Shown piece by piece: positions 3,898 through 43,088 of a stretch of 64,000 bases of DNA (positions are counted from its first letter, which is position 1; every line of letters starts with the position of its first letter). This DNA is from Macrostomum lignano (Eukaryota). The notes under the pieces were generated by a model, which saw nothing but the letters and a program-made list of their open reading frames with translations, searched no databases and had not been told where the DNA came from. Made by a program: the position numbers and the translations under genes. Location of the stretch: contig NIVC01002398.1 of NCBI GenBank assembly GCA_002269645.1, positions 1 to 64,000 on the forward strand. The letters run 5' to 3'.

Positions 3898-5286
3898 ATG
3901 GCAAAACAACTTTTATCGATAAAATTTGCTTATATATTCGGTAAGTGACTGAACTATAGCCGCCACTATGATTTTAATACCAATTAGTTTCACGCTTTAG
4001 TTTGCACTCTGTTCTTTAATGACAACGAAGTAAATTATCCCAACGCAGTTTGCTGCTCTCTCGTGCTGCGAGTACAAGGCACCAGTTTGCGGACCTATTC
4101 TGTGTGCCCAGAGCAGCAGCTTCACATGCTGGAAGCCGTTCTGAACGCCTACAACAACGTCACGACAACAACCAAGGCCACTCATATCGACTGTCTAGCG
4201 AAGTGCCAGAGGGTGAGCTGCAGCGCTGCCATCTCGGTGGAGAGCAATGCCACGTGCGAGATGGTCACCATAACAACCGCCAAGCTGTCAATCTCAGCAA
4301 ATCAGGTGCAGCAAGTCATCGGATCTCAGGTCGGTGCGAAGGTGTGGAAGGCGGACGACAGCGACTGGCCTTCGCCTGCAGTGCAGCTTTGGAGTGAGTC
4401 ATCAATGCATAGTCTTAGTCGTAAGTTCTTACCAAGATTTCGGCAGACAGAAATTGCACTCACTCCAGTTCTGCACGACGCTGCTCCGTTGCAGACAGCA
4501 GCACAGGTAGAAACGGCTCAATCCAAAGCGTCCTCATCAACACGACCGGCTGCTACCTGATCAAAGCTGCCGGCGCCAGAGGTGGCGACAACTTACTGAC
4601 GAACAAAGCCGGAGGCCAGGGAGCCCAGGTGAGCGCCAGAGTCAACCTGACAGCCGGCACCCAGCTGAGCATCGTTGTGGGCCAGATGGGCGGCTCGACC
4701 TCTCGAAATAGCGAAGGAGGCGGCGGAGGCGGCGGCAGCTTCGTGTACCGGACGGGTGACCAGCTGCTGCTGCTGGCTGCCGGCGGAGGCGGCGGAGCTT
4801 CTTGCTTAGAAAATGGTGAGCCCAGTAGCTGTAGTGTAAATTATAAAAAAAATCCACTTGAATCAACAATTTCATTTTACCGTAGGTAAACCAGGAGAGA
4901 CTGGGATAAACGGTTCTGACAGCCTGGGTAACGTCGCTAAATACACGGGATTCGGCGGCAGCAACGGTCAGCCGGGCTACAACAATCCCGCTGACACCAG
5001 AAGCGATAGAACCCATGGAGGCTGCGGCGCCGGCTGGCTCGGCAGGGCCGTCAAGCGCAGGCGGAGCTCCTCGGACGGAGAGAGAGGCGGCAGTCTGGCC
5101 GACGGCTGGGTCGGCGGCAGCGCCGGAGACGGCAGCGTCTGCGACGGAGGCTTCGGTGGAGGCGGCGGAGGCGGCGGCTCCTTCTGCAGGGGCGGCTGCG
5201 TGTTCGGTGGCACCTCTACCGGGCACCAGGGCTTCGTCTCCGTCCTGCTGGAGTCGACCTCGGCCGCTTGCGATTCGGGCACCTGA
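3898..5286 (+). CDS. Secreted PAN-like + ALK/LTK-type glycine-rich domain protein, copy A (369 aa)
   Basis: Exons 3898-3940, 4049-4393, 4495-4815, 4886-5286; all GT-AG, phase 1, open frame. Signal peptide MAKQLLSIKFAYIFVCCSLVLRVQG; PAN-like DCLAKCQRVSC-x11-C; glycine-rich domain motifs TGCYLIKAAGARGG, GGQGAQVSARVNLTAGTQLSIVVGQMG, GGGGGSFV, LLLAAGGGGG, GGGFGGGGG. Has a 96-nt in-frame deletion relative to paralogs. Confidence 0.85.
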
Positions 5287-5769
5287 TGCCATTGCAGCCG
5301 CTTGTTGACGTAGGGACTTACCAGTCTCTACTTGACGCTACTCTTCTGGGACATAAGAGTAAGGTTTAAAAAAGTAGACACAAGGAATCAGATTAGCTTT
5401 CTCCACATATATTTGATTGAGTTCAGAAGAAAAGGGTCAACCTATTTTCTCAAAACTTTAATAGCTGAATTCGTTGAATACTGAGTTCAATTACAGTTCA
5501 ATTATCATCAACTATAATACTAGTGCTGAAAACATTGTAAGAAGGGCAGGACATCAGAGTTGAGAAACTCTAATTATAACTACTTACCTTATGTATAACT
5601 GTCGCCATACAACGTGGCCTATCTAGGGAATATAAGCGCCATGCTTTCAACTGACTTTCTTCACACTTATAAGTCAACTTTTCTAAAATAAATTTTTGCT
5701 GTTTTCTTTCTGAAATAACCCCGAGATAATCTATTTTTACCTGATACTCGAATCTTTCACTGTTACTGA

Positions 5770-6020
5770 CTTTGCACTCAGACAACTCGAACAATTCCCA
5801 ATTATTAATAAACACTAAATGCACTCGTCTGTCCAAAGCCGCCCGTCTTTTTTTCCTGCCAGAGAATTTCTGGAGGTTTTTTTAGACGAGCGGAAAAGAC
5901 TCAGTTCAGCTGTCTTTCAGCGTCTGCTTTCGGTGCATGCCAAGGCCGCTCGACTGCAGCTCCCTGCAGTTGCCTTCCTGCACGCATCCGCACCCTTCCG
6001 TACCATGCTTGCTCGCTCAT
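5770..6020 (+). repeat. Conserved ~250-bp block downstream of each full-length glycine-rich gene
   Basis: Reverse-complement copies at about 9010-9190, 16450-16680, 32680-32950 and 40850-41060 (shared ttgcactcagacaactc...aaagccgcccgtctttttt...ctttcggtgcatgccaaggccgctcgactgcag). Confidence 0.8.
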
Positions 6021-6344
6021 GGGCTACGATGGGGAATTGAAAATCTTTTAAAAACTTGTTAAGTAGGCCGAGAAAATTTTAAACTGTAGCTTTCCCTAGC
6101 AGTTGAACATTTTGCCATGAAAACAAATCCTCGGGTTTACATGATGTACTTTCTGGCTCAGAAATTTGTGGTAATGATTTCGTTTTAACTTCTGTAGTCA
6201 GTGTTTAAGCTGACAAAGACTGCTAATTCAATACACCCTAATTAAATACTCGAAGCAATCTGCTTTGGTTTTTATTCTCGGAGCAACAATAGGTAAAAAA
6301 TTACTTAAGCGGTCAATATATGCTTTTGGGAGATGCGGCAAGTT

Positions 6345-6908
6345 GGTAGAGATGCAGGGAGGCAGAGATGCAGGGCGGAGGCAGAGATGCAGGGTGGTGG
6401 CAGAGATGCAGGGAGGTGATAGAGACGCAGGGCGGAGGCAGAGATGCAGGGCGGTGGCAGAGATGCAAGGAGGTGGCAGAGATGCAGGAAGGTAGCAGAG
6501 ATGCAGGGAGGTGGCAGAGATGCAGGAAGGTGGCAGAGATGCAGGAAGGTGGCAGAGATGCATGGAGGTGGCAGAGATGCAGGGAGGTGAGAGAGATGCA
6601 GGAAGGTGGCAGAGATGCATGGAGGTGGCAGAGATGCAGGGAGGTGATAGAGACGCAGGGCGGAGGCAGAGATGCAGGGAGGTGATAGAGACGCAGGGCG
6701 GAGGCAGAGATGCAGGGAGGTGAGAGAGATGCAGGGCGGTGACAGAGATGCAGGGCGGTGACAGAGATGCATGGAGGTGAGAAAGAGGCAGGGAGGTGAG
6801 AAAGAGGCAGGGAGGTGAGAAAGAGGCAGGGAGGTGGCGGAGATGCAGGGAGGTGAGAGAGATGCAGGGCGGTGGCAGAGATGCAGGGAGGTGGCAGAGA
6901 TGCAGGGA
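6345..6908 (+). repeat. 19-bp minisatellite (GCAGAGATGCAGGGAGGTG)n
   Basis: Period 19 read directly; roughly 30 degenerate copies. Confidence 0.95.
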
Positions 6909-7500: not shown

Positions 7501-8404
7501 TGATGTTCATGGAGTTGGAGTTACCTACCGAATAGAAGTGTTGGTAAATGTGATAATCAAAGAAAGCTCCATTCCGCCATTGAAAGGAGTTCCAGTTTCC
7601 TAAATCTGAAAACTTAAAACTGTCCAGTCACCTTCAAGCTAATCAGCAATATTTTTCATCCAGCCTTCAATTTTGTGTGTCGATGTTGTGGAAGAGTCAA
7701 TGTTGTCAATGTCAATGTCAATGTCAATGTTGTCAATGTTGTGTGTCGCGTTTTAGAACTCTTTCTTAATTCAAAATGCACACTAGCTCTATGTACACGC
7801 GACACTGTACATTGCATGAATCAATATTTCAACCCGCTTCACTTGACAATATATATAGTCTGACTTTGGCCAACTTGGGCCTCAAGAGTTTTGTCGTGCC
7901 TAAATGTCTCGCTTGTTCCTACTTAACAGCAGTGTGTGCTTGAGTATTTGGATATAGTTTAATGATGATACAGCTAATATAAAGTTAGATGGTCTCTAAC
8001 TTACGTGAGCTGTGGCAAGAAAGCATGAATTCTAAATTGCAAATTACCTGTTGAAGCTGCAGTCTGCATCAGTCCTATGTATTCGAAGATTCTGACTGAT
8101 GCAGACCATGTGCTCAGAGTTGACTGTTGCCGACCCGCAGTGTCCCGAACACACGGGACATCAATCAGGAGCTGAACCTCGGTTAGAATACAGGAAAACT
8201 TTATTCAATTTGAATCTTGCAAGAACTAAAACAAAAGTAGCAAGCATGCCGTTTCAATTTCACTGTCAAAGTTCAGTAAGGGTATGATAAAAAACATTTT
8301 CCACGTAACATAAACAGTGAAAATTAGATTCATAAACTTTATTATACGATCTGTCTCTCCTTCATCTCCGACTGATCGGTGACTAGCGGATTCATACATC
8401 GCTG

Positions 8405-9618: not shown

Positions 9619-12600
9619 TCAGGTGTCCAAGTTGCAGGTGGCTGAGTCCGACTCCAGCAGGACGGACACAAAGCCCTGGTCGCCGGTCCAGGTGCCGCCG
9701 AACACGCAGCCGCCGTTGCAGAAGGAGCCGCCGCCGCCGCCGCTGTGGCCGAAGCCCAGTCCGGCTCCGCCACCGCTGAAGCCGCCACCACCTCCAGCCG
9801 TTCCGTTAAGTGGGCTGGTCCTGCTGCCGCCTCCGCCGCCTCCGCCGAAGCCTCCGTCGCAGACGCTGCCGTCTCCGGCGCTGCCGCCGACCCAGCCGTT
9901 GGCCAGGCTGCCGCCTCTCTCTCCGTCCGAGGAGCTCCGCCTGGGGCTGACGGCCCTGCCGAGCCAGCCGGCGCCGCAGCCGCCGTGGTTGCTATGGCTT
10001 GGGGTTCCAGAGGGGCTGTTGGAGCCCGGATTACCGTTGGTGCCGCCAAATCCAGCTAGGGTAGTGCCGGCACCAAGACTGTCAGAACCGTTTATCCCAG
10101 TCTCTCCCTGTTGTCCTACGGTATAATCAAGCAAGCTGCTTATCAGTGGCTTTTCGGTTCATAATTTACATATTTTTAGCAAAATGCAGCCACTGAGCTC
10201 ACCGTTTCTACTAAAGGAAGCTCCGCCGCCTCCGCCGGCAGCCAGCAGCAGCAGCTGGTCGACCGTCCGGTACACAAAGCTGCCGCCTCCTCCGCCGCCT
10301 CCTTCTAAATCCAAGGAGGTCGAGCCGCCCATCTGACCCACAACGATGCTCAGCTGTGTGCCGGCTGTCAGGTTGACTCTGGCGCTCACCTGGGCTCCCT
10401 GGCCTCCGGGTGTGTTCGTCAGTAAGTTGTGGCCACCTCTGGCGCCGGCAGCTTTGATCAGGTAGCAGCCGGTCGTGTTGATGAGGACGCTTTGGATTGA
10501 GCCGTTTCTACCTGTGCTGCTGTCTGCAACGGAGCAGCGTCAGCGAGTTACAGAACTGGAGTGAGTGCAATTTTTGTCTGTGCCAGAATCGTAGTTGCGT
10601 TGGTTTGTGACTAGTTCTAACCTGTGACTATCCAGTTTTAAATCCCAATCTTCGGCCCTGCCAGTGTCGCCCTGCATGCGTTCTCTCTTCCACTTGTCCA
10701 CGCTGTATGGACTGCTTGGCTCTGTGTGCCTTGAGTGGTGGCCTGGTGGGGGCGGGCTTTAGCCTCGGCGTCGTCGTTCCTTGTATTTGCATCTCGCTAT
10801 GTTTACTCAGTGCTTTGGGATGTCTGTATGAGCTCAAAACTTTAGCTGTAAATTTTCGATTTGCCGTCATATCTGATATCGACCGGTTAAAAATGGCCCA
10901 AGTTCTCACGGCTCTGAGAGACAATGGCCTGCCGGCTTCGGTAAATAAACAAGAGCTTATTAAACGGCTTGATATGATGCAGAAGGAGACACAACAGAAA
11001 AGCAGCGATAAATCAGCTGCTGAACGAGGAAGAATCCGAGATATTCAACCCGACAACATCGCCCAGACTTATTAGCGAGATTCAGAAAACTGGATGGTGG
11101 ATCGAGCTGCAAGAAATGAAGAAGCGATTGGTGCAACTCCGGGGCAGGAAATCGGACTGCATACCGCTGCCACAGCTGTAGATTTCAACCCGATTTTAAC
11201 ACTTTTTGGTCTGCTTTCAGCGAAGATGCGGCCGGCTCGACGTCTTCTGCTCATCTCGCATTGGATCGCTGCAAACTCCAGAATAATGCTGCAGCTGCTA
11301 GACCCCAACCAGCTCGTCTCTAAAGAAAGCGATTGAAGTATTGACGTGTGTCGCTTGAAGGCTTACCCCAATTTCAACATAAATATTGGCCAGCTCATAG
11401 CAGCAAACAACCATTAGAATATCGTCTTTTGATATGATGAGGACATGTGTCTGTTACTGTACGAGCTACAAAGAGACTCAGACAGCCCAGACCTCAATCT
11501 TACTCGTATAATCTATCTATCAAGCACATGACGGCGGCGCCGAACCTGCGAAGAAGAAGCAGCAAGAAGTCTTCCAGTAGTAACGTCTAATGGCAATATC
11601 ATAGGGCCAGACGATTTGCGCCTTTTTCAACCGCAACCAGGGAGGTCCGGGGCAGCCTTGCAATTTTGCATACGTCTGCTGGATTTGTGAGCTCTGTCCA
11701 TCAGCACACCAAAGGCGCGGGCCCAAAAAGCTGATCGACGTTGCCTCACCCTCTGCCTCGCCTTCTGCTTTGCCTGCTGTCTCGCATACTGCTTCATTCT
11801 CTCCCGTCTCCGCCTCCTTCGTCATACTCTATACAGTCACGTCTGATGGCGCCTTAACTACCGACAAATGTAGAGGTTTATCCATTCATAGAATGTTACT
11901 GTAAGTAGACTAATGCAAACACGCATAGCAAAACTTAAACTGTTAATCATGTTACTATTAAAACGGAGAAATTGATCATGTTATCATTTATAATGAAAAA
12001 GATGAATCATGCTACTCGTATTATTCATATCTCGCAAAAATTGCGTACGTATAAATACAAGCAAAAATCCGATATGGAATCTCATACTCGGCCGACTTCA
12101 GAATCCAAGAAACTCCGGAGGAAGACTACATTGAGGAGACAAGCTCTATGGATCTGTCTGACAACTGAGGAGCCCGCAATAGTGAGTGATCACTAAATTC
12201 TGTTCCCAGACTTGCGGTCTGGAAGTGGGAGTTTTTGAGTGACTAATCACCACTCTTAAACTACTCACAAAATCTAACCAGCCCGCCAAGCCGCCAGGCA
12301 AAGCCGCCAGGCAAAGCCGCCAATTCAGACACCGGGTCGATTTTTCACCCGGTGTCTCACCATAGTTTCAATATACTAGCCTGCGTCATGAATTCTTCAT
12401 CGTCAAAAAGCCAGCTCAATCAGTCGCCGAAGTCAGCAACTACGAATCCGCTCTTTGTGAGGACAGAAAGACAGCTGGTTGAGTTCCAGATCAAAGAGGA
12501 AGATGAGACTGGCCGCACTTGATTAGAATCAGGTTGCTACCGCGCATCTCCGTTCGTGGCAATGCTGCTGTTGATCTTCTTTAGGTTTAATGCGTTGGTC

Positions 12601-13464
12601 TGTGACTGCTTCTGACTTGTTACTAACCAGTTTTAGGCAACACTACTCTGCCCTGTCTATGTCGCCTTGCGTGCGTCCTTTCTCTCTCTCTCTGCCCGCG
12701 CTGTAGAGGGGGGAGGGCGTTACTCGGCTCTGCGTGCATGGGGTGGTGACCCGATGGGGGGTGGGCGCCGTCGCCCTTATATTTGCGTCTTGCTCCGTCT
12801 AATCAGCGGTTTTGGCTGCCTGCGACAACTCAAAGTTTTTTCTCTAAAGTTCTTCTTTGCATCACTGTTTTAATTGGTTTTGCCAACTACACTTTGATTT
12901 CGAACTTTTGCTTTTACGTGCCATTGCTGCTTTTGTATCTTCTCTAGATTTAAAACCACCCACGACTATGAATTGCTGACTCACTCCGAAGATGCACTGC
13001 AGGCGAAGGCCAGTCGCTGTCGTCCGCCTTCCACACCTTCGCACCGACCTGAGATCCGATGACTTGCTGCACCTGATTTGCTGAGATTGACAGCTTGGCG
13101 GTTGTTATGGTGACCATCTCGCACGTGGCATTGCTCTCCACCGAGACGGCAGCGCTGCAGCTCACCCTCTGGCACTTTGCTAGACAGTCGATATGAGTAG
13201 CCTTGGTTGTTGTCGTGACGTTGTTGTAGGCGTTCAGAACGGCTTCCAGCATGTGAAGCTGCTGCTCTGAGCACACAGAATAGGTCCGCAAACTGGTGGT
13301 GCCTTGTACTCGAAGCACGAGAGAGCAGCAAACTGCATTGGTGCAATTCGCAGTCAGTAATGAATAGCATGCATTGAATAACTGTGAGCAGCGGTTTTGA
13401 GTCAGGAAGGGAGTCACTTACCGAATAAGAAAAGTAATTTTAAAGACAAAATTTTATCAGTCAT
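9619..13464 (-). CDS. Secreted PAN-like + ALK/LTK-type glycine-rich domain protein, copy B (402 aa)
   Basis: Exons 13464-13422, 13332-12985, 10523-10203, 10115-9619; GT-AG, phase 1, open frame of 1209 nt. Intron 2 is enlarged to about 2.46 kb by a retroelement. Confidence 0.85.
10595..12953 (+). mobile_element. Deleted Ngaro-like (DIRS order) retroelement with split direct repeats A1-gag-B1-A2-B2
   Basis: A1 ~10595-10850 matches A2 ~12591-12850 (tgcgttggtytgtgact...ccagtttta...gtgtcgccytgc). B1 ~12515-12590 matches B2 ~12888-12953 (cgtgscaWtgctgct...atcttct..tagRtttaa). Absent from the equivalent intron of paralogs. No RT or tyrosine recombinase recognised. Confidence 0.7.
10872..11730 (+). 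pseudogene. Degenerate gag-like ORF of the Ngaro-like element (SAP-like motif + C-terminal zinc knuckle)
   Basis: SDIDRLKMAQVLTALRDNGLPASVNKQELIKRL resembles a SAP motif; (W)NIVF(x)YDEDM near 11415-11445; ICAFFNRNQGGPGQPCNFAYVCWICELCPSAH at ~11614-11710 resembles DIRS/Ngaro gag Cys/His knuckles. Several stops and frameshifts. Confidence 0.6.
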
Positions 13465-17134: not shown

Positions 17135-18644
17135 TCAGGTGCCCGAGTCGCAGGCGGCTGAGGCCGACTCCAGTATGACAGACACGAAGCCCTGGTCGCC
17201 GGTCCAGGTGCCGCCGAACACGCAGCCGCCCTTGCAGAAAGAGCCGCCGCCGCCGCCGATGTGGCCGTGGCTCAATCCGGCTCCGCCGCCGCTGAAGCCG
17301 CCGCCGGCCCCAGGGGTGCCTTTCAGTGAGCTGGTCATGCTGCCGCATCCGCCGCCTCCGCCGAAGCCTCCGTCGCAGACGCTGCCGTCTCCGGCGCCGC
17401 CGCCGACCCAGCCGTCGGCCAGACTGCCGCCTCTCTCTCCGTCCGAGGAGCTCCGCCTGGGGCTGACGGCCCTGCCGAGCCAGCCGGCGCCGCAGCCTCC
17501 ATGGGTTCTATCACTTGGGGTGTCAGCGGGATTGTTGTAGCCCGGCTGACCGTTGCTGCCGCCGAATCCCGTGTATGCGCTGTTTGCTCCGATGCTGTCA
17601 GAACCGTTTATCGCAGTCTCTCCCGGCTGTCCTACATTTAAATCAATCCAACTGCCGATGTAATCTATGTAATCTAATGCCGGTTTTTGGTTCGCATATT
17701 GTAGAATCTACCCTACTGCAGCTACTGAGCTCACCATTTTCACCGGTTGATGCTCCGCCGCCTCCGCCGGCAGCCAGCAGCAGCAGCTGGTCGACCGTCC
17801 GGTACACGAAGCTGCCGCCCCCTCCACCGCCTCCTTCGATATCCAACGACGTCGAGCCGCCCATCTGGCCCACAACGATGCTCAGCTGGGTGCCGGCTGT
17901 CAGGTTGACTCTGGCGCTCACCTGGGCTCCCTGTCCTCCAGATGTGCTCCTCAGTAAGTTGTGGCCACCTCTGGCGCCGGCAGCTCTGATCAGGTAGCAG
18001 CCGGTCGTGTTGATGAGGACGCTTTGGATTGAGCCGTTTCTGCCTGTGCTGCTGTCTGCAATGGAGCAGCGTCAGCGAGTTACAGAACTGGAGTGAGTGC
18101 AATTTCTGTCTGAGCCAAAATCATGATAACCACACAGGACTAAGAATGTTATTGATGACTCACTCCGAAGCTGCACTGCAGGCGAAGGCCAGTCGGTGTC
18201 GTCCGCCTTCCACACCTTCGCACCGACCTGAGATCCGATGACTTGCTGCACCTGATTTGCTGAGATTGACAGCTTGGCGGTTGTTATGGTGACCATCTCG
18301 CACGTGGCATTGCTCTGCACCGAGACGGCGGCGCTGCAGCTCACCCTCTGGCACTTTGCTAGACAGTCTATTGCAGTAGTGGCCTTGGTTGTTGTCGTGA
18401 TGTTGTTGTAGGCGTTCAGAACGGCTTCCAGCATGTGAAGCTGCTGCTCTGAGCACACATAATAGGTCCGCAAACTGGCGCCTCGTACTCGAAGCACGAG
18501 AGAGCAGCAAACTGCATTGGTGCAATTCGCGGTCAGTAATGAACAGCATGCATGGAATAACTGTGAGCATAGGTTTTTAAGTCAAGATTGCAGTCACTTA
18601 CCGAATAAGCAAAGTAATTGTAAAGACAGAACTTTATCATTCAT
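17135..18644 (-). CDS. Secreted PAN-like + ALK/LTK-type glycine-rich domain protein, copy C (402 aa)
   Basis: Exons 18644-18602, 18511-18164, 18055-17735, 17631-17135; GT-AG, phase 1, open frame of 1209 nt. Confidence 0.85.
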
Positions 18645-27291: not shown

Positions 27292-27545
27292 TGATGCTGC
27301 TCCATTGCAGACAGCAGCACAGGTAGAAACGGCTCAATCCAAAGTGTCGTCATCAGCATGACCGGCTGCTACCTGATCAAAGATGCCAGCGCAAAAGTAG
27401 GCAGAAACTTACTGACTTGCACATCCGGAGTCTGCCTGACAGCCGGTGCACAGCTGAACACCGTTGTTGGACGGATGGGCGGCTCGACCTCCTTGGATTT
27501 GGAAGGAGGCGGCGGTGGCGGCAGCTTCGTTTTCCAGACGAGCAT
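27292..27545 (+). pseudogene. Isolated degenerate exon 3 of the glycine-rich gene family (fragment D)
   Basis: Acceptor ccattgcag followed by SSTGRNGSIQSVVISMTGCYLIKDA...VVGRMGGSTSLDLEGGGGGGSFV, with an internal deletion; no neighbouring exons found. Confidence 0.8.
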
Positions 27546-28154: not shown

Positions 28155-28212
28155 TTCGTCATTCTTCCAATGCCTAAAAAGACAAGCCCTGTAATATGAG
28201 TACATCAATTGA

Positions 28213-30435: not shown

Positions 30436-31041
30436 TCAGGTGTCCAAGTCGCAGGTGGCTGAGGCCGACTCCAGCAGGACGAACACGAAGCCCTGGACGC
30501 CGGTCCAGGTCCCGCCGAAGACGCAGCCGCCCCGGCAGAACCGCCGCAGCCGCCAATGTGGCCCCGACCCAGTCTGGCCCCGCCGACGCTGAAGCCACCG
30601 CCGCAGCCGCCAATGTGGCCCCGACCCAGTCTGGCCCCGCCGACGCTGAAGCCACCGCCGCAGCCGCCAATGTGACCCTGACCCAGTCTGGCCCCGCCGA
30701 CGCTGAAGCCACCGCCGCAGCCGCCAATGTGGCCCTGACCCAGTCTGGCTCCGCCGACGCTGAAGCCACCGCGGGTCCATCGAAGACGCTGCCGTCTCCG
30801 GCGCTGCCGCCGAACCAGACATCGGCCAGACGACTGCCGCTTCTCTTTTACTCTGTCCGAGCAGCCTGCCTGGGGCAACTCGGCCCTGCCGAGTTAGCGG
30901 GCTCCGCAGCCGCCGTGGTGCTAGCGGAGGTGTTAGTTGGGTTTTTGACGTCTGGCTGACCGTTGATGCCACCGAATCCCGCGTTGAGGCTGTAGCCGTC
31001 CAGTCCGTCGAAACTGTCAATTCCAGCCTCACCCGGTTGTT
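30436..31041 (-). pseudogene. Frameshifted exon 4 of the glycine-rich gene family (fragment E) with internal 57-bp x4 expansion
   Basis: Acceptor at 31042; QPGEAGIDSFDGLDGYSLNAGFGG followed by frameshifts; ends with GCVFGGTWTGVQGFVFVLLESASATCDLDT*. Confidence 0.85.
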
Positions 31042-33566: not shown

Positions 33567-35056
33567 TCAGGTGCCTGAATCGCAGGCGGCTGAGGCCGAC
33601 TCCAGCAGGACGGACACGAAGCCCTGGTCGCCGGTCCAGGTGCCGCCGAACACGCAGCTGCCAATGCAGAAGGAGCCGCCGCCACCGCCGCTGTGGCCCT
33701 GGGCCAGTCCAGCTCCGCCCCCGCTGAAGCCACCGCCGCCTCCAGGGGCGCCTTTCAGTGAGCCGGTCCTGCTGCCGCCTCCACCGCCTCCGCCGAAGCC
33801 TCCATCACAGACGCTGTCGTCTCCGGCGCTGCCGCCGACCCAGCCGTCGGCTAGACTGCCGCCTCTGTCTCCGTCCAAGGAGCTCCGCCTGGGGCTGACG
33901 GCCCTGCCGAGCCAGCCGGCGCCGCAGCCGCCGTGGTTGCTTTCGCTTGGAGTATTGGCGGGGTTGTTGAAGCCTGGCTGACCGTTGCTGCCGCCGAATC
34001 CTGCGTTTGGTTTGTAGTCACCCAGACTGTCGGAACCGTTGATCCCAGTCCCTCCCGGTAGCCCTACGATGAAATCAATCAAACTGCTTATCCAAGTTAA
34101 ATTTTCGCTTTTAAAACTTCACAATTCTAGAAACAAAGTTAATGAGATCACCATTTCTTTTGAAGCAAGCTCCGCCGCCTCCGCCGGCAGCCAGCAGCAG
34201 CAGCTGGTCGACCGTCCGGTACACGAAGCTGCCGCCGCCTCCGCCGCCTCCTTCGATATCCAACGACGTCGAGCCGCCCATCTGGTCCACAACGATGCTC
34301 AGCTGGGTGCCGGCCGTCAGGTTGACTCTGGCGCTCACCTGGGCTCCCTGGCCTCCGGATGTGTTTGTCAGTAAGTTGTCGCCACCTCTGGCTCCGGCAG
34401 CTCTGATCAGGTAGCAGCCGGTCGTGTTGATGAGGACGCTTTGGATTGAGCCGTTTCTACCTGTGCTGCTGTCTGCAATGGAGCAGCGTCAGCGAGGTAA
34501 AAAATGGAAGTGAATGCAATTTCAGTCTGTGCCAAGATCATGGAAACCACCCACGACTTTGCACTCCTGACTCACTCCAAAGCTGCACTGCAGGAGAAGG
34601 CCAGTCGCTGTCGTCCGCCTTCCACACCTTCGCACCGACCTGAGATCCGATGACTCGCTGCACCTGATTTGGTTAGATTGACAGTTTGGCGGTTGTTATG
34701 GTGACCATCTCGCACGTGGCATTGCTCTCCACCGAGACGGCAGCGCTGCAGCTCACCCTCTGGCACTTTGCTAGACAGTCGGTTGCATCAGTGGCCTTGG
34801 TTGTTGTCGTGACGTTGTTGTAGGCGTTCAGAACGGCTTCCAGCATGTGAAGCTGCTGCTCTGAGCACACAGAATAGGTCCGCAAACTGGTGCCTTGTAC
34901 TCGCAGCACGAGTGAGCAGCAAACTGCGTTGGGGCAATTGGTTGTCAATAATAAATAGCATGCATTGAATAACTTTTAGCTGTGGTTTTTAAGTCAAGAT
35001 TGCAGTCACTTACCGAATAATAAAAGCAATTGTAAAGACAGAATTTTATTAGTCAT
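33567..35056 (-). pseudogene. Glycine-rich gene copy F with one in-frame nonsense codon
   Basis: Exons 35056-35014, 34923-34576, 34472-34152, 34063-33567 have intact lengths and splice sites. TCA in paralogs is TAA here at 34675-34673 (codon 98). Confidence 0.8.
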
Positions 35057-36323
35057 ACTTGCAGCGATAGTCTGATTGTCCACCTGCAATTTCTAGTGAT
35101 TCTTGCGGCACAAACGGCTTGAGAGCTATTCTAACTGTATTTCCTCAACTTCAATCCTAAATGAACTATCCTAAGACTCGCAGTAGGGATGCTGAGTGCG
35201 GTCGCTGATCCTTGTTTTGGGAGCTGCTTTAGAGGAGACGCTTGCTAGAGACTGAATCAAGTAGATGTGGAAGGAAGTCTGAGCAGAGGCGGGTTCGCAG
35301 CCAATCCCAGACATGAGCTGCCCTCGTCGATAATGCTTGGGCGCTGCGGTGCAAGAGTTTCTTAAATAATAACAATTAGCAGGAGACTCAATTTTTTTTA
35401 TCATCGTCTCACGCATAATGCGCTGGGGTAGTTCTTCATATTCCGCTTACTGATGAGCACGTACTTTACACGCACACTCTGTGCCTTGGGATTTGGCCTT
35501 TGTTGTGGTTGGTTGTGAATCGCACGACAACCGCTGACAATTTCGTGTACAACCCCAAATAAATTTTGGCCACGAACTTCGTGGTGCGAAAGCCAGTCGC
35601 GTTTACCACTGACCTACTCTGACCCCAACAGTTCGTGTATTTGGGAATTTTTAGACTGAAAACTGCCTCATATTGCGGACCCGTTTTTGTAGGATTTTTG
35701 TTAACTTGCCGAAAAATCTGACGCTCAGCTACAATTGTTCTACAAAATTCGAATTGGATAACCTGTGCTCGAGTAACCAAGCTAGGCAATGCAGATGGAT
35801 TCAGATGGATAAGCAGATGGATAAGCATGAAGGATGTCATCGCTGTTGGCAGGATTTTCTTGATTAGCCTCAAGTGTGCAGAATAAAAGTAAGTGCAAAA
35901 GAGGGCGCCGGCTTAGAATAAAAGTTTAGCACACTCAATAACTAGAAGAGTTAACACCTTTCAATAGTGGGTGTTTCACGCATGGTTTCGACACCAGCTG
36001 AATAAAAAAATGCTGAACCTTGCATAGGCGTGCGGCAAAAATCTTGAGTTGTGTAAAGTGCCCTGCTTCAGCGAGCTGCTGCCAAGAATGAGTGGGAAGT
36101 GGGAAATAAGTTCCATTGTTGTTGGAATATTTCGCACTAGGCTGAAAACCAGAAAAGCTTTTATGCATTTATTAAAAACGAACGAGCTGTGACAGTTGTT
36201 TTAGCTTACAATACGCTTTGGGCTTAAGCTTTAACAACGTTTAAAAATTACTGTTCTATAGTTTTTGAAACTTTTTGAAAATACCTGTCTTACCAGTGTT
36301 ACATGTACATTGCACCACACACT

Positions 36324-37100
36324 GAAGAGAAGCAATTGTAAAGACAGAACTTGATCAGTCATGCTTGCAGCGATAGTCTTCAATGTCTTGCATTTCTTCT
36401 TTTTAAACCCAAAAGAAGAATCAAAAGCAGCATTGGCACGAAAGGGGATGCGCGGAAGCAACCCCATAAGAGCAACAGCTCGAATTAAAAGTGTATTTTG
36501 CATTACGAAAGCAAACAGCGATGCAAGAAAATTGGAAAAATAAAACTTTAAAGAAAAAAAATTGAGCTCATGCAGGCAGCCAATAACGCTGAGTCAACTG
36601 AGCGAGACGCCAATAAAAGGGGCGACGGCGCAGAGGCTAAAGCCCACCCCACCAGGCCACCACCCCACACACGCAGAGCCAAAGCACCACCCACACAGAG
36701 CGGACAGGAGAGAGAAAGTACGCAAGGCGACACAAGGCGGGCAGAGGAGTGGGCTTTAAAACTGGCTATTGACTAGTCAAGACCAGTCACAAACCAACAC
36801 AAATAAAAGGCTCGATTGATAGCTTTTCTACCTGTCTTTTTAGTGATGAAATACCAAATCAATTTTATCATATCAGAAGTGTATATACTTTTAGTCAGGA
36901 AGCAGAGTGCATTCGCTGCTAGCTCGTACTTTTCCTCTGGAAGCTGAGAAGTTGTTTGCTACTCTAGAGACTAATACAAGTAGGTGTGGAAGAAGGTCTG
37001 AGCAGCGGACGGCTAAGAGGACGACCAATCTCAGACATGAGCTGCCCTTATCGCTCAGGAGCTTTACCTACCGATGATTAATAAGCGCTGGAGTTTCTTA
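36324..37100 (-). pseudogene. Orphan exon 1 + promoter of the glycine-rich gene family (fragment G)
   Basis: ATG at 36362 reads MTDQVLSLQLLLF with the donor lost; TATA-like box at 36881-36887 and promoter homology to ~37100; no exons 2-4. Confidence 0.7.
36404..36800 (-). mobile_element. Solo A-B repeat of the Ngaro-like element
   Basis: Reverse complement matches A (10595/12591) followed by B (12515/12888); interrupts the 5' UTR of fragment G. Confidence 0.7.
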
Positions 37101-38700: not shown

Positions 38701-38814
38701 GGATCTTCACAAGAAGCTGGCCAAGTCTGCAGCACTGAGGCTGACACCGACGATCCAGTTGACATCGAAGTCACACTCGTCCCCGAGTTAATTGTCCCCG
38801 CTGAGAAGGGTCGG

Positions 38815-39560
38815 CGGCACCTGGAGAAGCGGCTGTCCGTTCTCGGCTATGCGGACGACCTCGCGCTGCTGTCAACGACGGCTGAAGGCGCCCAGCGGCT
38901 GCTGGATGGCCTGACGGCAGCAGCGTCGCGAGTCGGCCTCAAGCTGAACGCGCGGAAGACGGTAGTCTTCACTGTATACTCCAAAAAGCCTGCCGAATAA
39001 TCGAGACGCTGCCGGGGATGCAATCATGCTTACCCACTGCCAGCGGTTCCTGTATCTCTGCGGCCTCGTGCCGGACCTTGCCGACGACCTGGTGAGAGGA
39101 CGAGGATTGGCCTGGGCCGCGCTCCGTGCTCCATTCTGAGGCCCTGGATGAAAGGCTCAAGGCTCGGCTGTTTCAGGCAGTCGTTAAGACTGTCCTGTTG
39201 TACAACGCCTAGACCTGGACCCTGCCGCACGCCTTAGAGAGGCAGCTGGACGCTGCGCATGCGGCCATGCTGCGTGCGGCGTTCAGAGTGCGCAGCGGTC
39301 CAGACAGCGAGACCAACGCCGCACTCTACGCAAGAGCGCGCCTGATGCGGCTTTCTGACCTGCTGCGCGGGCGACGACTTTGACTAGCTGGCCATATCAT
39401 CCAGTCGGAGGCCCGCTGCCCTGAGCCGCTACACGAAGTGCTGCTGCTCAAGCTGCAGGGACCGCGCAGGCGAGGCCAAGGGCGAACGGCGAGATATCCT
39501 GACCAGCTTTTGACTGATGCTGGCGCCTCGGACCAAGCTGGGGGTGTGACTTTTTGAGAG
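38815..39560 (+). mobile_element. RTE-like LINE reverse transcriptase 3' fragment
   Basis: LSVLGYADDLALLSTTAEGAQRLLDGLTAAASRVGLKLNARKT (YADD motif), followed by a frameshifted C-terminal region. Confidence 0.8.
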
Positions 39561-41593
39561 CTTGAGGACGCGCTCTCTGACTTCTCCCCCCATTTATGGT
39601 CACTGATCAAGTGTCTGGCGGGAGAAGTCTTGTTGTTTTTAATGTATTGGAATTAGGGATGGAATCTGTGGGAATTTGCAATTCTCTCGATTGGCCAGGT
39701 CGGCAGAACCATTTTTCGCTCGTCGTCTGATTAGGGTAGCGAACAGGAATTTCCACCTAGGTAGATGTCTAGGACGCAGCACATAGCAACTCGAGAATCT
39801 GTCTTCATGTAAACATGTTCAACTACTATGTAAAGCTACCGTTAAAGGCTTGAAGAGTTTAAGAGTGGTGATCAGTCACTCAAAAACTCCCACTTCTAGA
39901 CACTGGGGAACAAGTGCCTAGGTTTTACCAGTTCAAACTACTTACTGCAGCGGATCCTCTTGGGGTCGGCAGCCGGTGGAGTTCTGTGGCACGTCGGGAT
40001 AGCAAGCTTGCTGAGCGGTTACGGCGACCGGTTCCGGTGAACAACTGTTTTTCTTTGGTGTCCTTAACTTTATCTGTGGGTCGACCAGAACGAGAGCGAA
40101 TCAAAATTCTTGACGGTCCTCGAGCTCGAAATTAACAGTAGAACGTGCGCCCTAATGAACAATTGAATTCTCTAATTTTCTGTGATAGGTCCTCCTGAAG
40201 GGCGGCTTCTTCGTTACGTCCGAAACGTAACGGATAACTCAATTAAATCAATAAATCCTCTAGGAATATCCTAGGAAACAAGGAGGCCTTTCTCAAATGT
40301 ATCGACAATGAACTGCTCTCGTATACTCAATTAACCAACTTATTAGCGCTAGTAACAAATATCTAAATCGGGTAAACGCTTACCAATTGGACAGGTGTGG
40401 TCCCTCAGAGATTGGTCTTCTTATTTCTTCAGAGTCTTCTTAGAGACCGCTCCGAGTCTGAATTTTTGACTCAAATTTCACTTATATTTATAGCAAAATT
40501 TTGGAGAAAAACCGGTTTGGGATTGGGTACATGTATTTACTTAGGTCAAAAATGTTTGATTAAGCTGTCATGCATGTTTGAGCATTACCATATATGGGGT
40601 TAAGCAAATACAGCTGTTGGAATCCGGTTCCTTGATCAAACAATGTAGGTTTCTAAATCATTCTGTTTGCGCGTGATTCCTAAAATAGATATGACTCATT
40701 TTGAAAGAAATTGACTTCCTTAGAATATTACTTCAAGTAGAGCATTACGGTATGGTCTAATAACTCTACAGGCTTAGCGGCCTACATACAAAGTTTAAAA
40801 CCTTGCAATTCCATCGTGGTTGTTCATACTTGAGCCTAGCAAGCGGTATGGAGCAACTGTAGGAATCTGCAGCCGAGGGCCGAAAGCAGATACTGAAAGA
40901 CAGCTGACCACACAAATCTGTTTATCTCGTTTAAAAATTGCCCTGAAATTCTCTGGCAGAAAAAAAGACGAGCGGCTTCAAACAGACGAGTGCATTGAGT
41001 ATTTATTAATTATTGGGATTTGAGAACTGTTTAAGTTGTCTGAGTGCAAAGTCAGTAGCAGAGAAAAGATTCCATAATCGGGTGAATAGCAGTTCAGTAT
41101 GGCGTGATTTCAGGACAGAGACAGCAAAAACATACGAAAACTAAGCTTTGTACGAAAACTAAGCTAAGAATATAAAGATCTAATAAAAAGTAACAACATG
41201 ATTAATCACATTGGCTGCAAGTTATGAATTTTATAATGCACATACACTAGGGAGGAGAAGTTAGTGACTACAATGTTCTTATCACTAGCAGCATAGTGCG
41301 GATAATATGGAATTAAATATTGTTTAGCTACATTTATAAAAGCAAACTAACAAAATTTATTATGCCTACTTTAAAACCCTTCCCCCAAATAATTGCTAGT
41401 ATTTTGCAATGACTAAAATTCTATTGAACTGCTATGTTCTACTAGTAGCCATCCAAGCAGTCAAAGAACTAACCCATTTGAACCAAAAGAAAAACTTCAC
41501 GGTTCACAAGAATAAGCAGTACTACACAATGACCATCAAAGTTGAAACACGACAGCTCGCCAGGCCCAAAATGAGCAAGCAGTTGCAGTGCAA

Positions 41594-43088
41594 TCAGGTG
41601 CCCGAGTCGCACGCGGCTGAGGCCGACTCCAGCAGGACGGACACGAAGCCCTGGTCGCCGGTCCAGGTGCCGCCGAACACGCAGCCGCCACTACAGAAGG
41701 AGCCGCCGCCTCCGCCGATGTGGCCGTAGGCCAGTCCAGCTCCGCCGCCGCTGAAGCCGCCGCCGGCTCCAGGGGTGCCTTTCTCTGAGCCGGTCATGCT
41801 GCCGCCTCCACCGCCTCCGCCGAAGCCTCCATCGCAGACGCTGCCGTCTCCGGCGCTGCCGCCGACCCAGCCGTGGGCCAGACTGCCGCCTCTCTCTCCG
41901 TCCGAGGAGCTCCGTCTGGGGTTAACGGCCCTGCCGAGCCAGCCGGCGCCGCAGCCGCCGTGGTTGCTTTTGAGGTGGGTGCTAGCGGGGCTGTTTGAGC
42001 CTGGCTTACCGTTGGCGCCGCCGAATCCCGGGTATGCGCTGTTGGCTCCGTTGCTGTCGGAACCGTTTGTCCCAGTCTCTGCTGGTTGTCCTACCATCAA
42101 TAAAACTTCTTATTAGAGTGGTTTAATGGCTTCTGATGATTTACAATTTAAGCAACTGCTGCTACTAAGCCCACCATTTCTAGCGAAGGAAGCTCCGCCG
42201 CCTCCGCCGGCAGCCAGCAGCAGCAGCTGGTCGACCGTCCGGTACACGAAGCTGCCGCCGCCTCCGCCGCCTCCTTCATAATCCAAGAACGTCGAGCCGC
42301 CCATCTGGCCCACAACGATGCTCAGCTGGGTGCCGGCTGTCAGGTTAACTCTGGCGCTCACCTGGGCTCCCTGGCCTCCGGATGTGTTCGTCAGTAAGTT
42401 TCCGCCACCTCTGGCGCCGGCAGCTTTGATCAGGTAGCAGCCGGTCGTGTTGATGAGGACGCTTTGGATTGAGCCGTTTCTACCTGTGCTGCTGTCTGCA
42501 ATGGAGCAGCGTCAGCGAGTTACAAAACTGGAGTGAGTGCAATTTCTGTCTGTGCCGAAATCATGGTAGCCACCCTCGACAAAGACTATGCATTGATGAC
42601 TCACTCCGAAGCTGCACTGCAGGAGAAGGCCAGTCGCTGTCGTCCGCCTTCCACACCTTCGCACCGACCTGAGATCCGATGACTTGCTGCACCTGATCTG
42701 CTGAGATTGACAGCTTGGCGGTTGTTATGGTGACCATCTCGCACGTGGCATTGCTCTCCACCGAGACGGCAGCGCTGCAGCTCACCCTCTGGCACTTCGC
42801 TAGACAATCGGTAGCATCAGTGGCCTTGGTTGTTGTTGTGACGTTGTTGTAGGCGTTCAGAACGGCTTCCAGCATGTGAAGCTGCTGCTCTGAGCACACA
42901 GAATAGGTCCGCAAACTGGTGGTGCCTTGTACTCGAAGCACGAGAGAGCAGCAAACTGCATTGGGGCAATGCGCGGTCAGTAATACACAGCATGCATTGA
43001 ATAACTGTGAGCAGCGGTTCTTAAGTCAGGGTGGCAATCACTTACCGAATAAGAAAAGTAATTGTACAGACAGAATTTTATCAGTCAT
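41594..43088 (-). CDS. Secreted PAN-like + ALK/LTK-type glycine-rich domain protein, copy H (403 aa)
   Basis: Exons 43088-43046, 42955-42605, 42495-42175, 42090-41594; GT-AG, phase 1, open frame of 1212 nt. Confidence 0.85.

What the first reader, a model, noticed from the sequence alone, without database searches (positions are those of the whole stretch)
3898..43088. Array of secreted PAN + ALK/LTK-type polyglycine-domain genes with constant framework and hypervariable loops: candidate diversified recognition system
Seen: five full-length copies (A, B, C, F, H) and three fragments share one 4-exon structure. The modelled CDS ends just after the Gly-rich domain, with no TM, kinase or EGF segment, and carries several N-x-S/T sequons. 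Gly motifs are invariant while the loops between them differ. After NGSDS: LGNVAKYT / LGAGTTLA / IGANSAYT / LGDYKPNA / NGANSAYP. After NGxPG: YNNPADTRSDRTH / SNSPSGTPSHSNH / YNNPADTPSDRTH / FNNPANTPSESNH / SNSPASTHLKSNH. After MGGST: SRNSE / SLDLE / SLDIE / SLDIE / FLDYE. After AAGGGGGA: SCLEN / SFSRN / STGEN / CFKRN / SFARN. Established: the ALK/LTK glycine-rich domain is a ligand-binding module built on polyglycine-II helices, and T-even phage gp38 adhesins use conserved Gly motifs to display hypervariable receptor-binding loops. Inference: these may be soluble variable binders (innate immunity, mucus/adhesion or self-recognition), which would fit the neighbouring F-type lectins. Soluble decoys for ALK ligands are an alternative. 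I do not recognise a named family with this architecture.
Basis: partly seen in the sequence, partly recalled or inferred. Interest (0 to 1): 0.88.

Follow-up and report, generated by a model that had tools for sequence, protein, structure and literature searches.

The report
Flatworm array of secreted ALK-like genes
A flatworm (Macrostomum lignano) gene cluster encodes secreted, kinase-less proteins that carry the ligand-binding domain of the ALK/LTK receptors, but their very variable loops look like weakly constrained sequence that has drifted, not like an immune-type diversified repertoire.

Summary
Two corrections apply. Copy F has a TAA nonsense codon in exon 2. Copy A lacks 32 codons of the glycine lattice.

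The organism is Macrostomum lignano. The C-terminal ~270 residues are an ALK/LTK-type TNF-like/glycine-rich (TG) domain. An AlphaFold model has the 21 best PDB matches all to ALK/LTK, with E down to 3e-11. There is a signal peptide and no TM segment, kinase or EGF module. The N-terminal 'PAN' domain is only weakly supported.

The diversification claim fails its own test. A standard site model (M2a vs M1a) is 'significant', with omega 5.2 and p=2e-12. A model with a fast neutral class fits 20.8 lnL units better, and with both parameters free the fast class has omega 0.3-0.7. Simulations show the two cases can be told apart. The loops are as diverged at third codon positions (0.44) as at positions 1+2 (0.38), like the neighbouring intron.

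Best reading: an array evolving by birth-and-death and gene conversion, belonging to a large uncharacterised family of secreted TG-domain proteins that is also found in cnidarians.

The parts
3898..5286 (+). Copy A. Exons are 3898-3940, 4049-4393, 4495-4815 and 4886-5286 (369 aa). It is the only copy on the + strand. It has an in-frame 32-codon deletion in the Gly lattice, and its flanks are unrelated to those of the other copies.
   Evidence: UniRef fragment P0005 is identical over 222 compared residues.
9619..13464 (-). Copy B. Exons are 13464-13422, 13332-12985, 10523-10203 and 10115-9619 (402 aa). The ORF is intact. Intron 2 is 2461 bp, against about 100 bp in the other copies.
   Evidence: It is 96% identical to UniRef A0A1I8HRN4 (P0001).
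17135..18644 (-). Copy C. Exons are 18644-18602, 18511-18164, 18055-17735 and 17631-17135 (402 aa). The ORF is intact.
27304..27540 (+). Relic D. This is an exon-3 fragment covering the start of the TG domain. It has a 9-residue deletion and many substitutions.
30436..31039 (-). Relic E. This is an exon-4 pseudogene with a stop and a frameshift. It contains a 57-bp x 4.1 tandem amplification (30540-30772) of the 19-residue 'GGFSxGGAxLGxGHxGGxGG' unit. That is the same segment lost in copy A.
33567..35056 (-). Copy F. Exons are 35056-35014, 34923-34576, 34472-34152 and 34063-33567. It has all four exons, but a TAA nonsense codon lies at 34673-34675 (codon 98, exon 2).
36258..36362 (-). Relic G. 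This is an exon-1-like signal-peptide fragment ('MTDQVLSLQLLLF...') with no downstream exons.
   Evidence: weak match, E 0.05-0.6.
41594..43088 (-). Copy H. Exons are 43088-43046, 42955-42605, 42495-42175 and 42090-41594 (403 aa). The ORF is intact.

Best explanation
This is a tandem array in the flatworm Macrostomum lignano. Its genes encode small, secreted, N-glycosylated two-domain proteins.

Domain layout:
- a signal peptide;
- a cysteine-knotted, PAN/Apple-like N-terminal domain;
- a complete ALK/LTK-type TG domain, meaning a TNF-like beta-sandwich bracing a lattice of polyglycine-II helices;
- a stop codon directly after the TG domain, with no EGF, TM or kinase part.

The array evolves by birth and death. 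Three copies are intact, one is a deletion variant, one is a nonsense pseudogene and three are relics. Unequal exchange within the Gly-codon repeats adds or removes lattice units. Gene conversion moves patches between copies and keeps the 5' half and the framework similar.

The 'hypervariable' loops are the connectors between the pGII helices. They are weakly constrained in sequence but fixed in length. They have diverged at all three codon positions about as far as the adjacent intron and 3' flank. The same positions also vary in distant (cnidarian) relatives.

Inferred, not shown: the function lies in the nearly invariant PAN-like and TNF-like surfaces, so the paralogs probably bind the same class of extracellular partner, glycan or protein, in a secretion or matrix. 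They are probably not a repertoire of different specificities.
For: Organism and gene models: the best hits are M. lignano UniRef proteins, at 96% identity.

TG domain:
- The AF2 model has pLDDT 85-94 over most of the domain.
- The Foldseek top 21 PDB hits are all ALK/LTK TG structures, with E from 3e-11 to 1e-6.
- The family profile matches ALK chains at E=1e-8.

Secreted and kinase-less: plus a stop codon conserved in all copies. Coral homologues end at the same point.

Birth and death.

Conversion:
- All 10 possible bipartitions occur among 36 informative sites, with runs such as A+C at codons 272-283.
- P0001 is copy B with patches of copy C's states, and P0004 is F-like with other paralogs' states. 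The four hypervariable loops are unchanged in both.
- Non-coding divergence is 0.12-0.28 in introns 1-2 and 0.35-0.61 in intron 3 and the 3' flank.

Loops are not positively selected:
- NG86 omega is 0.5-1.1.
- The fast-neutral class model beats M2a by 20.8 lnL with the same number of parameters. Free omega for the fast class is 0.60 for the whole CDS and 0.33 for exon 4.
- In simulations, true omega=5 data favour M2a by 7-17 lnL (7 of 7 replicates). Fast-neutral data favour the rate model by 22-30 lnL (4 of 4). The real data give +20.8.
- In the loops, p-distance is 0.38 at positions 1+2 and 0.44 at position 3.

Loops are generically permissive: variable columns coincide with high-entropy columns in 47 coral-type homologues (Mann-Whitney p=1e-7).

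Framework omega is 0.00-0.15.
Against: Four-fold sites in the invariant framework codons are surprisingly conserved. K is 0.05-0.12, against 0.35-0.6 in the adjacent intron 3 and 3' flank. Measured against that yardstick alone, loop dN (0.25-0.5) is 2-4 times 'neutral'.

If the framework is kept similar by gene conversion, then small diverged loops surviving inside converted exons could reflect selection against homogenisation. In that case dS in the loops would also be raised by linkage, and omega<1 would not exclude maintenance of diversity.

Only five sequences were available, they recombine, and the intron 3 alignments are gappy.

No expression, localisation or ligand data exist for these genes, so the functional half of the statement is inference.

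The PAN assignment is weak.
Confidence: 0.62

Rival explanations
1. One reading: the array is a germline-encoded repertoire of soluble binders. The pGII lattice is a constant scaffold, and the loops are specificity-determining segments kept different by selection. The role would be innate immunity, self/non-self recognition or mate recognition. Loop 'cassettes' would be shuffled between copies by gene conversion.
For: - Variation is strongly clustered in the loops.
- At least 7 distinct loop haplotypes exist in the species.
- Loops are mosaic between copies.
- Loops remain intact while flanking framework patches are exchanged.
- The loops are 2-4 times more diverged than framework four-fold sites.
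- Standard M2a gives omega=5.2 for 11% of sites.
- Lectin-like genes lie in the array.
- There are weak fold echoes of phage fibre proteins (E about 0.01).
Against: - The M2a signal disappears once the hypervariable class may have its own rate. Omega then falls to 0.33-0.73, and simulations confirm that this test has power.
- Third positions are as diverged as first and second positions.
- Loop dN is no higher than adjacent non-coding divergence.
- The same positions vary in cnidarian homologues.
- Two of the five copies are defective and three are relics, and copy number is small for a repertoire.
- Loop lengths never vary.
Confidence: 0.14
2. The proteins are soluble decoys or modulators of the worm's own ALK pathway. 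They would capture the ALK ligand through a TG domain that mimics the receptor's.
For: The fold is the same as the ligand-binding TG region of ALK/LTK. M. lignano has other TG proteins, one of which UniRef names a protein-kinase-domain protein (P0018). The TNF-like part is nearly invariant among the paralogs.
Against: Identity to ALK/LTK TG domains is only 16-24%. From my own knowledge, the vertebrate ligands (ALKAL1/2) are not known outside vertebrates. TG domains occur in thousands of non-receptor architectures, with 4767 clusters, so the domain is not tied to ALK signalling. Pfam found no kinase domain in P0018. Nothing here links these genes to a ligand.
Confidence: 0.05
3. The proteins are bulk structural or secretory material: glycine-rich components of mucus, adhesive, eggshell or seminal fluid. 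Copy number would serve dosage, and loop sequence would be irrelevant.
For: - A signal peptide, many sequons and about 29% Gly.
- Strong GGC codon bias and low synonymous divergence, which are compatible with high expression.
- Tandem amplification.
- Cnidarian relatives are auto-named 'loricrin'.
- The loops behave neutrally.
Against: The Gly residues form a folded pGII lattice with an invariant framework (omega 0.00-0.15), not low-complexity filler. The conserved PAN-like and TNF-like domains argue for specific binding. No expression or proteomic evidence was found in the literature searches.
Confidence: 0.17

Closest known systems
TG (TNF-like + glycine-rich) ligand-binding region of the ALK and LTK receptor tyrosine kinases (PDB 7NX0/7NX1, 7NWZ, 7LS0, 7LRZ, 7MZY, 7N00; C. 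elegans SCD-2 7LIR; Pfam PF12810)
   Same: The fold and topology are the same. N- and C-terminal beta-strands form the TNF-like sandwich around a central block of pGII helices. The conserved motifs are YLIxAxGAxGG, VGQxGG, GGGGGGSF, AAGGGGGA and HGGxGAGW. Foldseek gives E=3e-11 and TM about 0.6 normalised to the target. The family profile matches ALK at E=1e-8.
   Different: Sequence identity is 16-24%. There is no EGF-like module, TM helix, kinase, MAM or LDLa domain. The protein is secreted and about 400 aa long. The N-terminal partner is a PAN-like domain. The genes form a tandem array of paralogs. Pfam's model scores below its threshold on the window copies.
Uncharacterised cnidarian secreted PAN_1 (+/- EGF_CA) + TG proteins. 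Examples are Porites harrisoni ABFA07_017308 (P0050), Stylophora pistillata AWC38_SpisGene21703 / 'loricrin-like' (P0083/P0084), Pocillopora 'putative lysozyme-like' (P0040) and Nematostella 'loricrin isoform X1/X2' (XP_048576997/8).
   Same: The order of parts is the same: signal peptide, PAN-type domain, TG domain, then a stop a few residues after the last TG strand. Identity over the TG domain is 40-50%, and the same loops are variable.
   Different: Their PAN domain is recognised by Pfam, whereas the flatworm N-terminal domain is not (hhalign P=0.044). Some have EGF modules between PAN and TG. In the loci I looked at, the TG domain sits in one exon and there is no dense tandem array.
Other M. 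lignano TG-domain proteins, which UniRef names 'WSC domain-containing', 'F5/8 type C domain-containing', 'Calmodulin', 'PPC domain-containing' and 'PE-PGRS family protein'
   Same: They have the same TG domain (38-61% identity) at the C-terminus. P0007 and P0009 have the same C-x3-C-x4-C-x11-C N-terminal core.
   Different: They have different or additional N-terminal modules. They lie outside this window, and several models may be mis-merged predictions.
Receptor-binding adhesin gp38 of T-even-type phages, which has a polyglycine-II sandwich with hypervariable segments between glycine-rich motifs (from my own knowledge)
   Same: The design principle is the same: invariant Gly motifs build a pGII scaffold and the variable segments lie between them. 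Weak Foldseek matches to other phage fibre or tail-tip proteins were seen (9D93, 7YPX, E about 0.01-0.02).
   Different: No significant sequence or fold match to gp38 itself was found. In gp38 the variable segments are the demonstrated receptor-binding site, whereas here nothing shows that the loops bind anything. The evolutionary signature differs, with omega at or below 1.

Membership tests
ALK/LTK-type TG (TNFL + GlyR) domain, Pfam PF12810 ALK_LTK_GRD | Match to the family HMM above the curated threshold | tested here: inconclusive
   Copies B and A score 17.7 and 13.7 bits against a gathering score of 24.5. Close M. lignano relatives (P0003-P0005, 80-94% identical) and most of the listed homologues carry precomputed PF12810 hits.
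ALK/LTK-type TG (TNFL + GlyR) domain, Pfam PF12810 ALK_LTK_GRD | Sequence homology to solved ALK/LTK TG domains | tested here: met
   A profile of 55 family members matches eight distinct ALK/SCD-2 chains at E from 1e-8 to 4e-7. A single-sequence search gives only E=0.11 to LTK.
ALK/LTK-type TG (TNFL + GlyR) domain, Pfam PF12810 ALK_LTK_GRD | Fold: a TNF-like beta-sandwich formed by N- and C-terminal strands, bracing a block of polyglycine-II helices | tested here: met
   The AF2 model of P0001 has mean pLDDT 75.5, with 85-94 over most of the TG part. Strands lie at 130-243 and 391-410, with a non-alpha, non-beta block between them. The Foldseek top 21 PDB hits are all ALK/LTK/SCD-2, with E from 3e-11 to 1e-6.
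ALK/LTK receptor tyrosine kinases (the receptors themselves) | Transmembrane helix and intracellular tyrosine-kinase domain | tested here: not met
   The stop codon directly follows the TG domain in all five copies. No hydrophobic window above 1.0 occurs after the signal peptide. No kinase motifs occur in any frame of the 64 kb. Poly(A) signals lie 164-401 nt downstream. Transcript data were not available.
ALK/LTK receptor tyrosine kinases (the receptors themselves) | Membrane-proximal EGF-like module after the TG domain, and MAM/LDLa modules before it | tested here: not met
   No Pfam hits other than the GRD. No EGF Cys motif occurs in the window.
PAN/Apple domain (Pfam PAN_1/PAN_4; PROSITE PS50948) | Match to a PAN family model | tested here: not met
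   No PAN hit at E<=1 for the isolated N-terminal domain. A profile search finds only M. lignano relatives. UniRef's automatic name 'Apple domain-containing protein' implies a PROSITE profile match, which I could not reproduce.
PAN/Apple domain (Pfam PAN_1/PAN_4; PROSITE PS50948) | Conserved disulfide core (C-x3-C-x4/5-C-x~11-C) and an alpha/beta hairpin-loop fold | tested here: inconclusive
   Four Cys are invariant across diverged M. lignano relatives. They align in register with the Pfam-recognised coral PAN_1 core, but only at hhalign P=0.044. The N-terminal domain has pLDDT 60-75 in the full-length model and 44 when modelled alone, so no fold search was meaningful.
Diversified recognition families (variable binders under diversifying selection) | Excess of non-synonymous over synonymous change in the variable segments | tested here: not met
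   NG86 omega is 0.5-1.1 and 0.6 for the four loops. ML omega of the hypervariable class is 0.33-0.73 with its rate free, and the fast-neutral model beats M2a by 20.8 lnL. This was validated by simulation. Divergence at position 3 is at least that at positions 1+2.
Diversified recognition families (variable binders under diversifying selection) | Variable residues form a contiguous exposed surface (a paratope-like face) | not testable with these tools
   The structure tool returns no coordinates. It can only be said that most variable loops lie in the pGII block (P0001 residues about 217-390) rather than in the TNF-like strands.
Diversified recognition families (variable binders under diversifying selection) | A large repertoire, or a somatic or allelic diversification mechanism | tested here: inconclusive
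   Five loop haplotypes occur in the window and at least two more in UniRef. Loops are identical between window copies and their UniRef counterparts, so there is no sign of rapid turnover. Population data were not available.

The most novel reading that the evidence does not exclude
The PAN-like/TG array is a germline repertoire of soluble binders on a polyglycine-II scaffold. Gene conversion homogenises the scaffold, while selection against homogenisation preserves old, divergent loop cassettes and reshuffles them among copies. This would explain why small, highly diverged loops persist inside exons whose silent sites are 3-5 times more conserved than the neighbouring intron. It would be an animal counterpart of the phage gp38 design and a new kind of invertebrate recognition molecule.
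Probability: 0.12. Interest if true: 0.8.

Novelty: new variant of a known kind. Interest (0 to 1): 0.4.

Why it matters
The TG domain is known almost only as the ligand-binding region of the ALK and LTK oncogene receptors. This array shows the same domain working as a free, secreted module. So do the 4767 sequence clusters found with its profile, in flatworms, corals, sea anemones, jellyfish and at least one bacterial assembly. No member of this group appears to have been studied, and databases mislabel some members as 'receptor protein-tyrosine kinase' or 'loricrin'.

M. lignano is a tractable model with RNAi and transgenesis, so the function of a stand-alone TG domain could be tested there.

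The case is also a cautionary one. A routine PAML-style site test gives p=2e-12 for positive selection, and that result vanishes when hypervariable codons are allowed a higher overall rate.

Tried and rejected
1. Pfam on the window proteins. GRD scored below threshold and no PAN hit appeared. I therefore turned to profile and structure evidence.

2. AF2 of the N-terminal domain alone, to test PAN. The pLDDT was 44, which is unusable, so I ran no further search on it.

3. hhalign of the flatworm N-terminal domain against coral PAN. The result was marginal.

4. Profile search with the N-terminal domain. It found only two more M. lignano proteins.

5. Literature searches. Terms covered Macrostomum with glycine-rich or LTK, PF12810, ALK/LTK evolution, coral PAN + glycine-rich, TNFL/GlyR, and loricrin + Nematostella. 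None describes secreted TG proteins. The ALK structure paper I tried by DOI is not held in the library. The Exaiptasia pedal-disc paper only cites loricrin in its reference list.

6. Looking for tandem arrays in coral loci. I found single copies within 8-10 kb flanks.

7. The first ML script timed out. I rewrote it with eigendecomposition.

8. I considered and rejected the idea that the ~300-aa ENA metagenome hits are bacterial. One hit (P0031) lies on a 4.8-Mb contig with animal-type genes and a LINE element.

9. I considered taking the M2a result at face value. I rejected that after the rate-class models and the simulations.

Full report
WHAT IS THERE

The window is eukaryotic. The best protein matches are predicted proteins of the free-living flatworm Macrostomum lignano, and copy B is 96% identical to UniRef A0A1I8HRN4, 'Apple domain-containing protein'.

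Searching the window with copy A's exons finds five complete copies of one four-exon gene:
- A at 3898-5286 (+)
- B at 9619-13464 (-)
- C at 17135-18644 (-)
- F at 33567-35056 (-)
- H at 41594-43088 (-)

All splice junctions are GT..AG, at the same positions and phases. Exon 1 plus the start of exon 2 encode a signal-peptide-like segment. Its Kyte-Doolittle score is 2.0-2.4, and no other window exceeds 1.0.

Three relics complete the array:
- an exon-3 piece at 27304-27540 (+)
- an exon-4 pseudogene at 30436-31039 (-)
- an exon-1-like piece at 36258-36362 (-)

Variable positions in the Gly-rich domain are significantly clustered, with 38 runs against 51.8 expected and P<1e-4.

Two things were missed. 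Copy F has TCA->TAA at codon 98 (34673-34675). Copy A has lost 32 codons of the Gly lattice in frame. The same 19-residue lattice unit that is missing from A is amplified about four-fold as a 57-bp tandem repeat in relic E. The Gly-codon repeats are therefore prone to unequal exchange.

WHAT THE DOMAINS ARE

Pfam alone is not decisive. ALK_LTK_GRD scores 17.7 bits against a threshold of 24.5, and no PAN hit appears.

Three other lines settle the C-terminal domain:
- Close relatives carry PF12810.
- A profile of 55 family members matches ALK and SCD-2 chains at E=1e-8.
- An AlphaFold model of P0001 has pLDDT 85-94 over most of the domain, and its 21 best PDB matches are all ALK, LTK or SCD-2 TG structures, with E from 3e-11 to 1e-6.

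The model shows beta-strands from the N- and C-terminal parts of the domain around a central block with neither helix nor strand. This is the TNF-like sandwich bracing a polyglycine-II lattice that was described for ALK and LTK (the description is from my own knowledge of the 2021 structure papers).

The protein ends a few residues after the last strand. The TGA is conserved in all copies, and poly(A) signals follow within 164-401 nt. No kinase or EGF motif exists in any frame of the window. Coral homologues end at the same place.

The N-terminal domain has an invariant C-x3-C-x4-C-x11-C core. This core aligns in register with the Pfam-recognised PAN_1 domain of the coral homologues, but only at hhalign P=0.044. 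A stand-alone model was too poor to use, with pLDDT 44. A profile search found no relatives outside M. lignano. 'PAN-like' is therefore plausible but not demonstrated.

IS IT A DIVERSIFIED RECOGNITION SYSTEM?

Pairwise Nei-Gojobori estimates
Omega is 0.38-0.58 for the whole gene, 0.00-0.15 for the framework and 0.5-1.1 for the 105 loop codons. The loop value holds even though those codons were chosen for being variable.

Neutral yardsticks
Divergence differs along the gene:
- introns 1 and 2: 0.12-0.28
- intron 3 and the 3' flank: 0.35-0.61
- four-fold sites of invariant residues: 0.05 in exon 2, 0.105 in exon 3 and 0.12 in exon 4

Because silent sites of the framework are so conserved, a conventional site model was bound to call the loops positively selected.

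Codon models
I wrote an ML implementation (GY94, F3x4, best of 15 topologies). It does indeed give M2a over M1a with LRT 53.9, p=2e-12, and 11% of sites at omega 5.2, located in the loops.

Replacing the omega>1 class with a neutral class that has a higher overall rate uses the same number of parameters and improves the fit by a further 20.8 lnL units. With both omega and rate free, the hypervariable class has these values:
- whole CDS: rate x8.7, omega 0.60
- exon 4: rate x14, omega 0.33, significantly below 1 (p=0.005)
- exons 2+3: omega 0.73

Simulation control
Simulated data show that the comparison has power with five sequences.
- Data generated with omega=5.2 favour M2a by 7-17 lnL in 7 of 7 replicates, and omega is recovered at 3.4-18.
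- Data generated with the fast-neutral class favour the rate model by 22-30 lnL in 4 of 4 replicates.
- The real data give +20.8.

Model-free counts
These agree. In the four loops the p-distance is 0.38 at codon positions 1+2 and 0.44 at position 3, against 0.10 at position 3 of invariant columns. Pairs that share a residue in a variable column differ synonymously twice as often as pairs in invariant columns.

The loops are therefore diverged at all positions, to about the level of the adjacent intron. They are not enriched for amino-acid-changing substitutions. The same alignment columns are also the high-entropy ones among 47 coral-type homologues (p=1e-7). These loops are a generally permissive part of the fold.

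HOW THE ARRAY EVOLVES

Homology between copies is limited to the gene plus about 300-400 bp of flank.

The 36 parsimony-informative sites support all ten possible bipartitions of the five copies. They fall in contiguous runs, such as A+C at codons 272-283 and B+H at 264-275.

P0001 differs from B at eight mature positions. Seven carry the residue of copy C and one carries that of copy H. P0004 differs from F at seven positions, and six of them carry the residue found in other paralogs. In both comparisons the four hypervariable loops are unchanged.

This is the mosaic expected from gene conversion. Together with the pseudogene, the deletion variant and the relics, it describes a birth-and-death array with patchy homogenisation.

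The low silent-site divergence of the framework is the one feature I cannot fully assign. Strong GGC bias, at 65% of Gly codons, suggests selection on codon use. Conversion confined to the conserved segments would have the same effect. If conversion is the cause, the persistence of small diverged loops inside converted exons could reflect selection against homogenisation.

WHAT IT MOST LIKELY DOES

Shown: these are secreted, glycosylation-competent, kinase-less proteins with a PAN-like domain and a TG domain.

Inferred: the PAN-like domain and the TNF-like part of the TG domain are almost invariant among the paralogs, and as far as I recall the cytokine contacts in ALK and LTK lie mainly on the TNF-like subdomain. 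The paralogs therefore probably share one class of extracellular partner, and the loops are free to drift. I could find no expression, localisation or ligand information for these genes.

Rivals:
- A bulk secretory or structural role is compatible with the codon bias and the gene amplification, but it fits poorly with a folded, strongly constrained scaffold.
- A decoy for an ALK ligand has no evidence for or against it.

COMPARISON WITH WHAT IS KNOWN

The domain is a member of the ALK/LTK TG family by profile and by fold. The proteins are not ALK/LTK receptors, because they have no TM segment, kinase or EGF module.

The same architecture, PAN_1 (+/- EGF) + TG followed by a stop, exists in corals and Nematostella. 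There it is auto-annotated as 'loricrin', 'lysozyme-like' or 'receptor protein-tyrosine kinase'.

A search of 1.84 billion representative proteins with the family profile finds 4767 clusters at E<=1e-3 and 1304 at E<=1e-10. Many are 300-850-aa proteins with a C-terminal TG domain. Some are giants with up to seven matched TG stretches. One is a 6308-aa protein from a Brocadiia metagenome assembly. One ~300-aa ENA hit that I traced (P0031) lies on a 4.8-Mb contig with animal-type genes and a LINE element.

This is therefore a large family that has not been described in the literature I could search, not a unique invention. The window adds a flatworm-specific subfamily arranged as a tandem array.

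The gp38 analogy is a fair description of the design, with Gly motifs as scaffold and variable segments between them. It is supported here only by weak fold echoes of other phage fibre proteins.

VERDICT

The domain identification is right. The diversification hypothesis is not supported by its own test, but it is not excluded.

Novelty: a new variant of a known kind, namely secreted, kinase-less TG proteins. The gene models are already in public protein sets but are uncharacterised. Interest is moderate, at 0.4.

Noticed in passing
window 20-784 (+) and 28203-28966 (-): An F5/8-type-C / F-type-lectin-like gene fragment is present twice in inverted orientation, at 91% nucleotide identity. One copy sits inside the array between relics D and E. 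ORF 28216-28620 (-) matches PF22633 at E=1.7e-8 and contains 'CSHT...GWWEGQL'.
   Followed up: partly
window 30540-30772 (-) and copy A (junction within 5150-5180): The same 19-residue pGII lattice unit ('GGFSxGGAxLGxGHxGGxGG') is tandemly amplified about four-fold (57-bp period, 97% matches) in relic E. It lies within the 32-codon in-frame deletion of copy A. Unequal exchange in the Gly-codon repeats changes the number of lattice units.
   Followed up: yes
exons of copies A, B, C, F and H (whole array): Four-fold degenerate sites in invariant residues diverge by only 0.05-0.12, while the neighbouring introns and flanks diverge by 0.12-0.61. Gly codons are 65% GGC. It is unresolved whether this reflects codon-usage selection or exon-limited gene conversion.
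   Followed up: partly
window 10203-12985 (intron 2 of copy B): Intron 2 is 2461 bp in B against about 100 bp in the other copies. It holds a + strand ORF (10611-11072) with a SAP-like 'LTALRDNGLPASVNKQELIKRL' motif and no Pfam hit. It is probably an insertion.
   Followed up: no
window 6344-6908 and 8397-8996: Two 19-bp minisatellites of about 30 copies each lie in inverted orientation between the convergent copies A and B. Similar short ORFs ('...FLDERK...LSVHAKAARLQLP...') lie just outside the two minisatellites (5819-6037 + and 8947-9195 -). A related repeat recurs near 16.4, 40.8 and 44.7 kb.
   Followed up: no
window 48416-53958 (-): Galactokinase exons are present: GHMP_kinases_C at 48416-48817, and the galactose-binding signature at 53674-53958 with E=3.5e-22. 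A 3.2-kb minisatellite of 44-bp units (49738-52916, 72 copies) apparently lies inside an intron.
   Followed up: partly
window 63259-63849 (-): An exon encodes a complete XRCC1 N-terminal domain (PF01834, E=6e-55).
   Followed up: no
window 57937-61232, 54039-54637, 55314-56143, 61854-63229: The 3' third of the window is dense in satellites. There are 23-bp units x 144 copies, (CAGA)n x 150, 35-bp units x 24 and 23/46/69-bp units. These create very long spurious ORFs.
   Followed up: no
window 44699-44950 (-), 15321-15575 (+), 38584-38997 (+): Retroelement fragments lie between the array members. One is an RVT_1-like ORF (E=4e-4). The other two ORFs look RNase-H-like and retropepsin-like by eye only.
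   Followed up: partly
UniRef entries P0003-P0005, P0010, P0012-P0014, P0276, P0277 (not in the window): UniRef automatically names 177-345-aa, kinase-less M. lignano TG proteins 'receptor protein-tyrosine kinase'. Cnidarian relatives are named 'loricrin'. These names are artefacts of domain-rule and composition-based annotation.
   Followed up: partly
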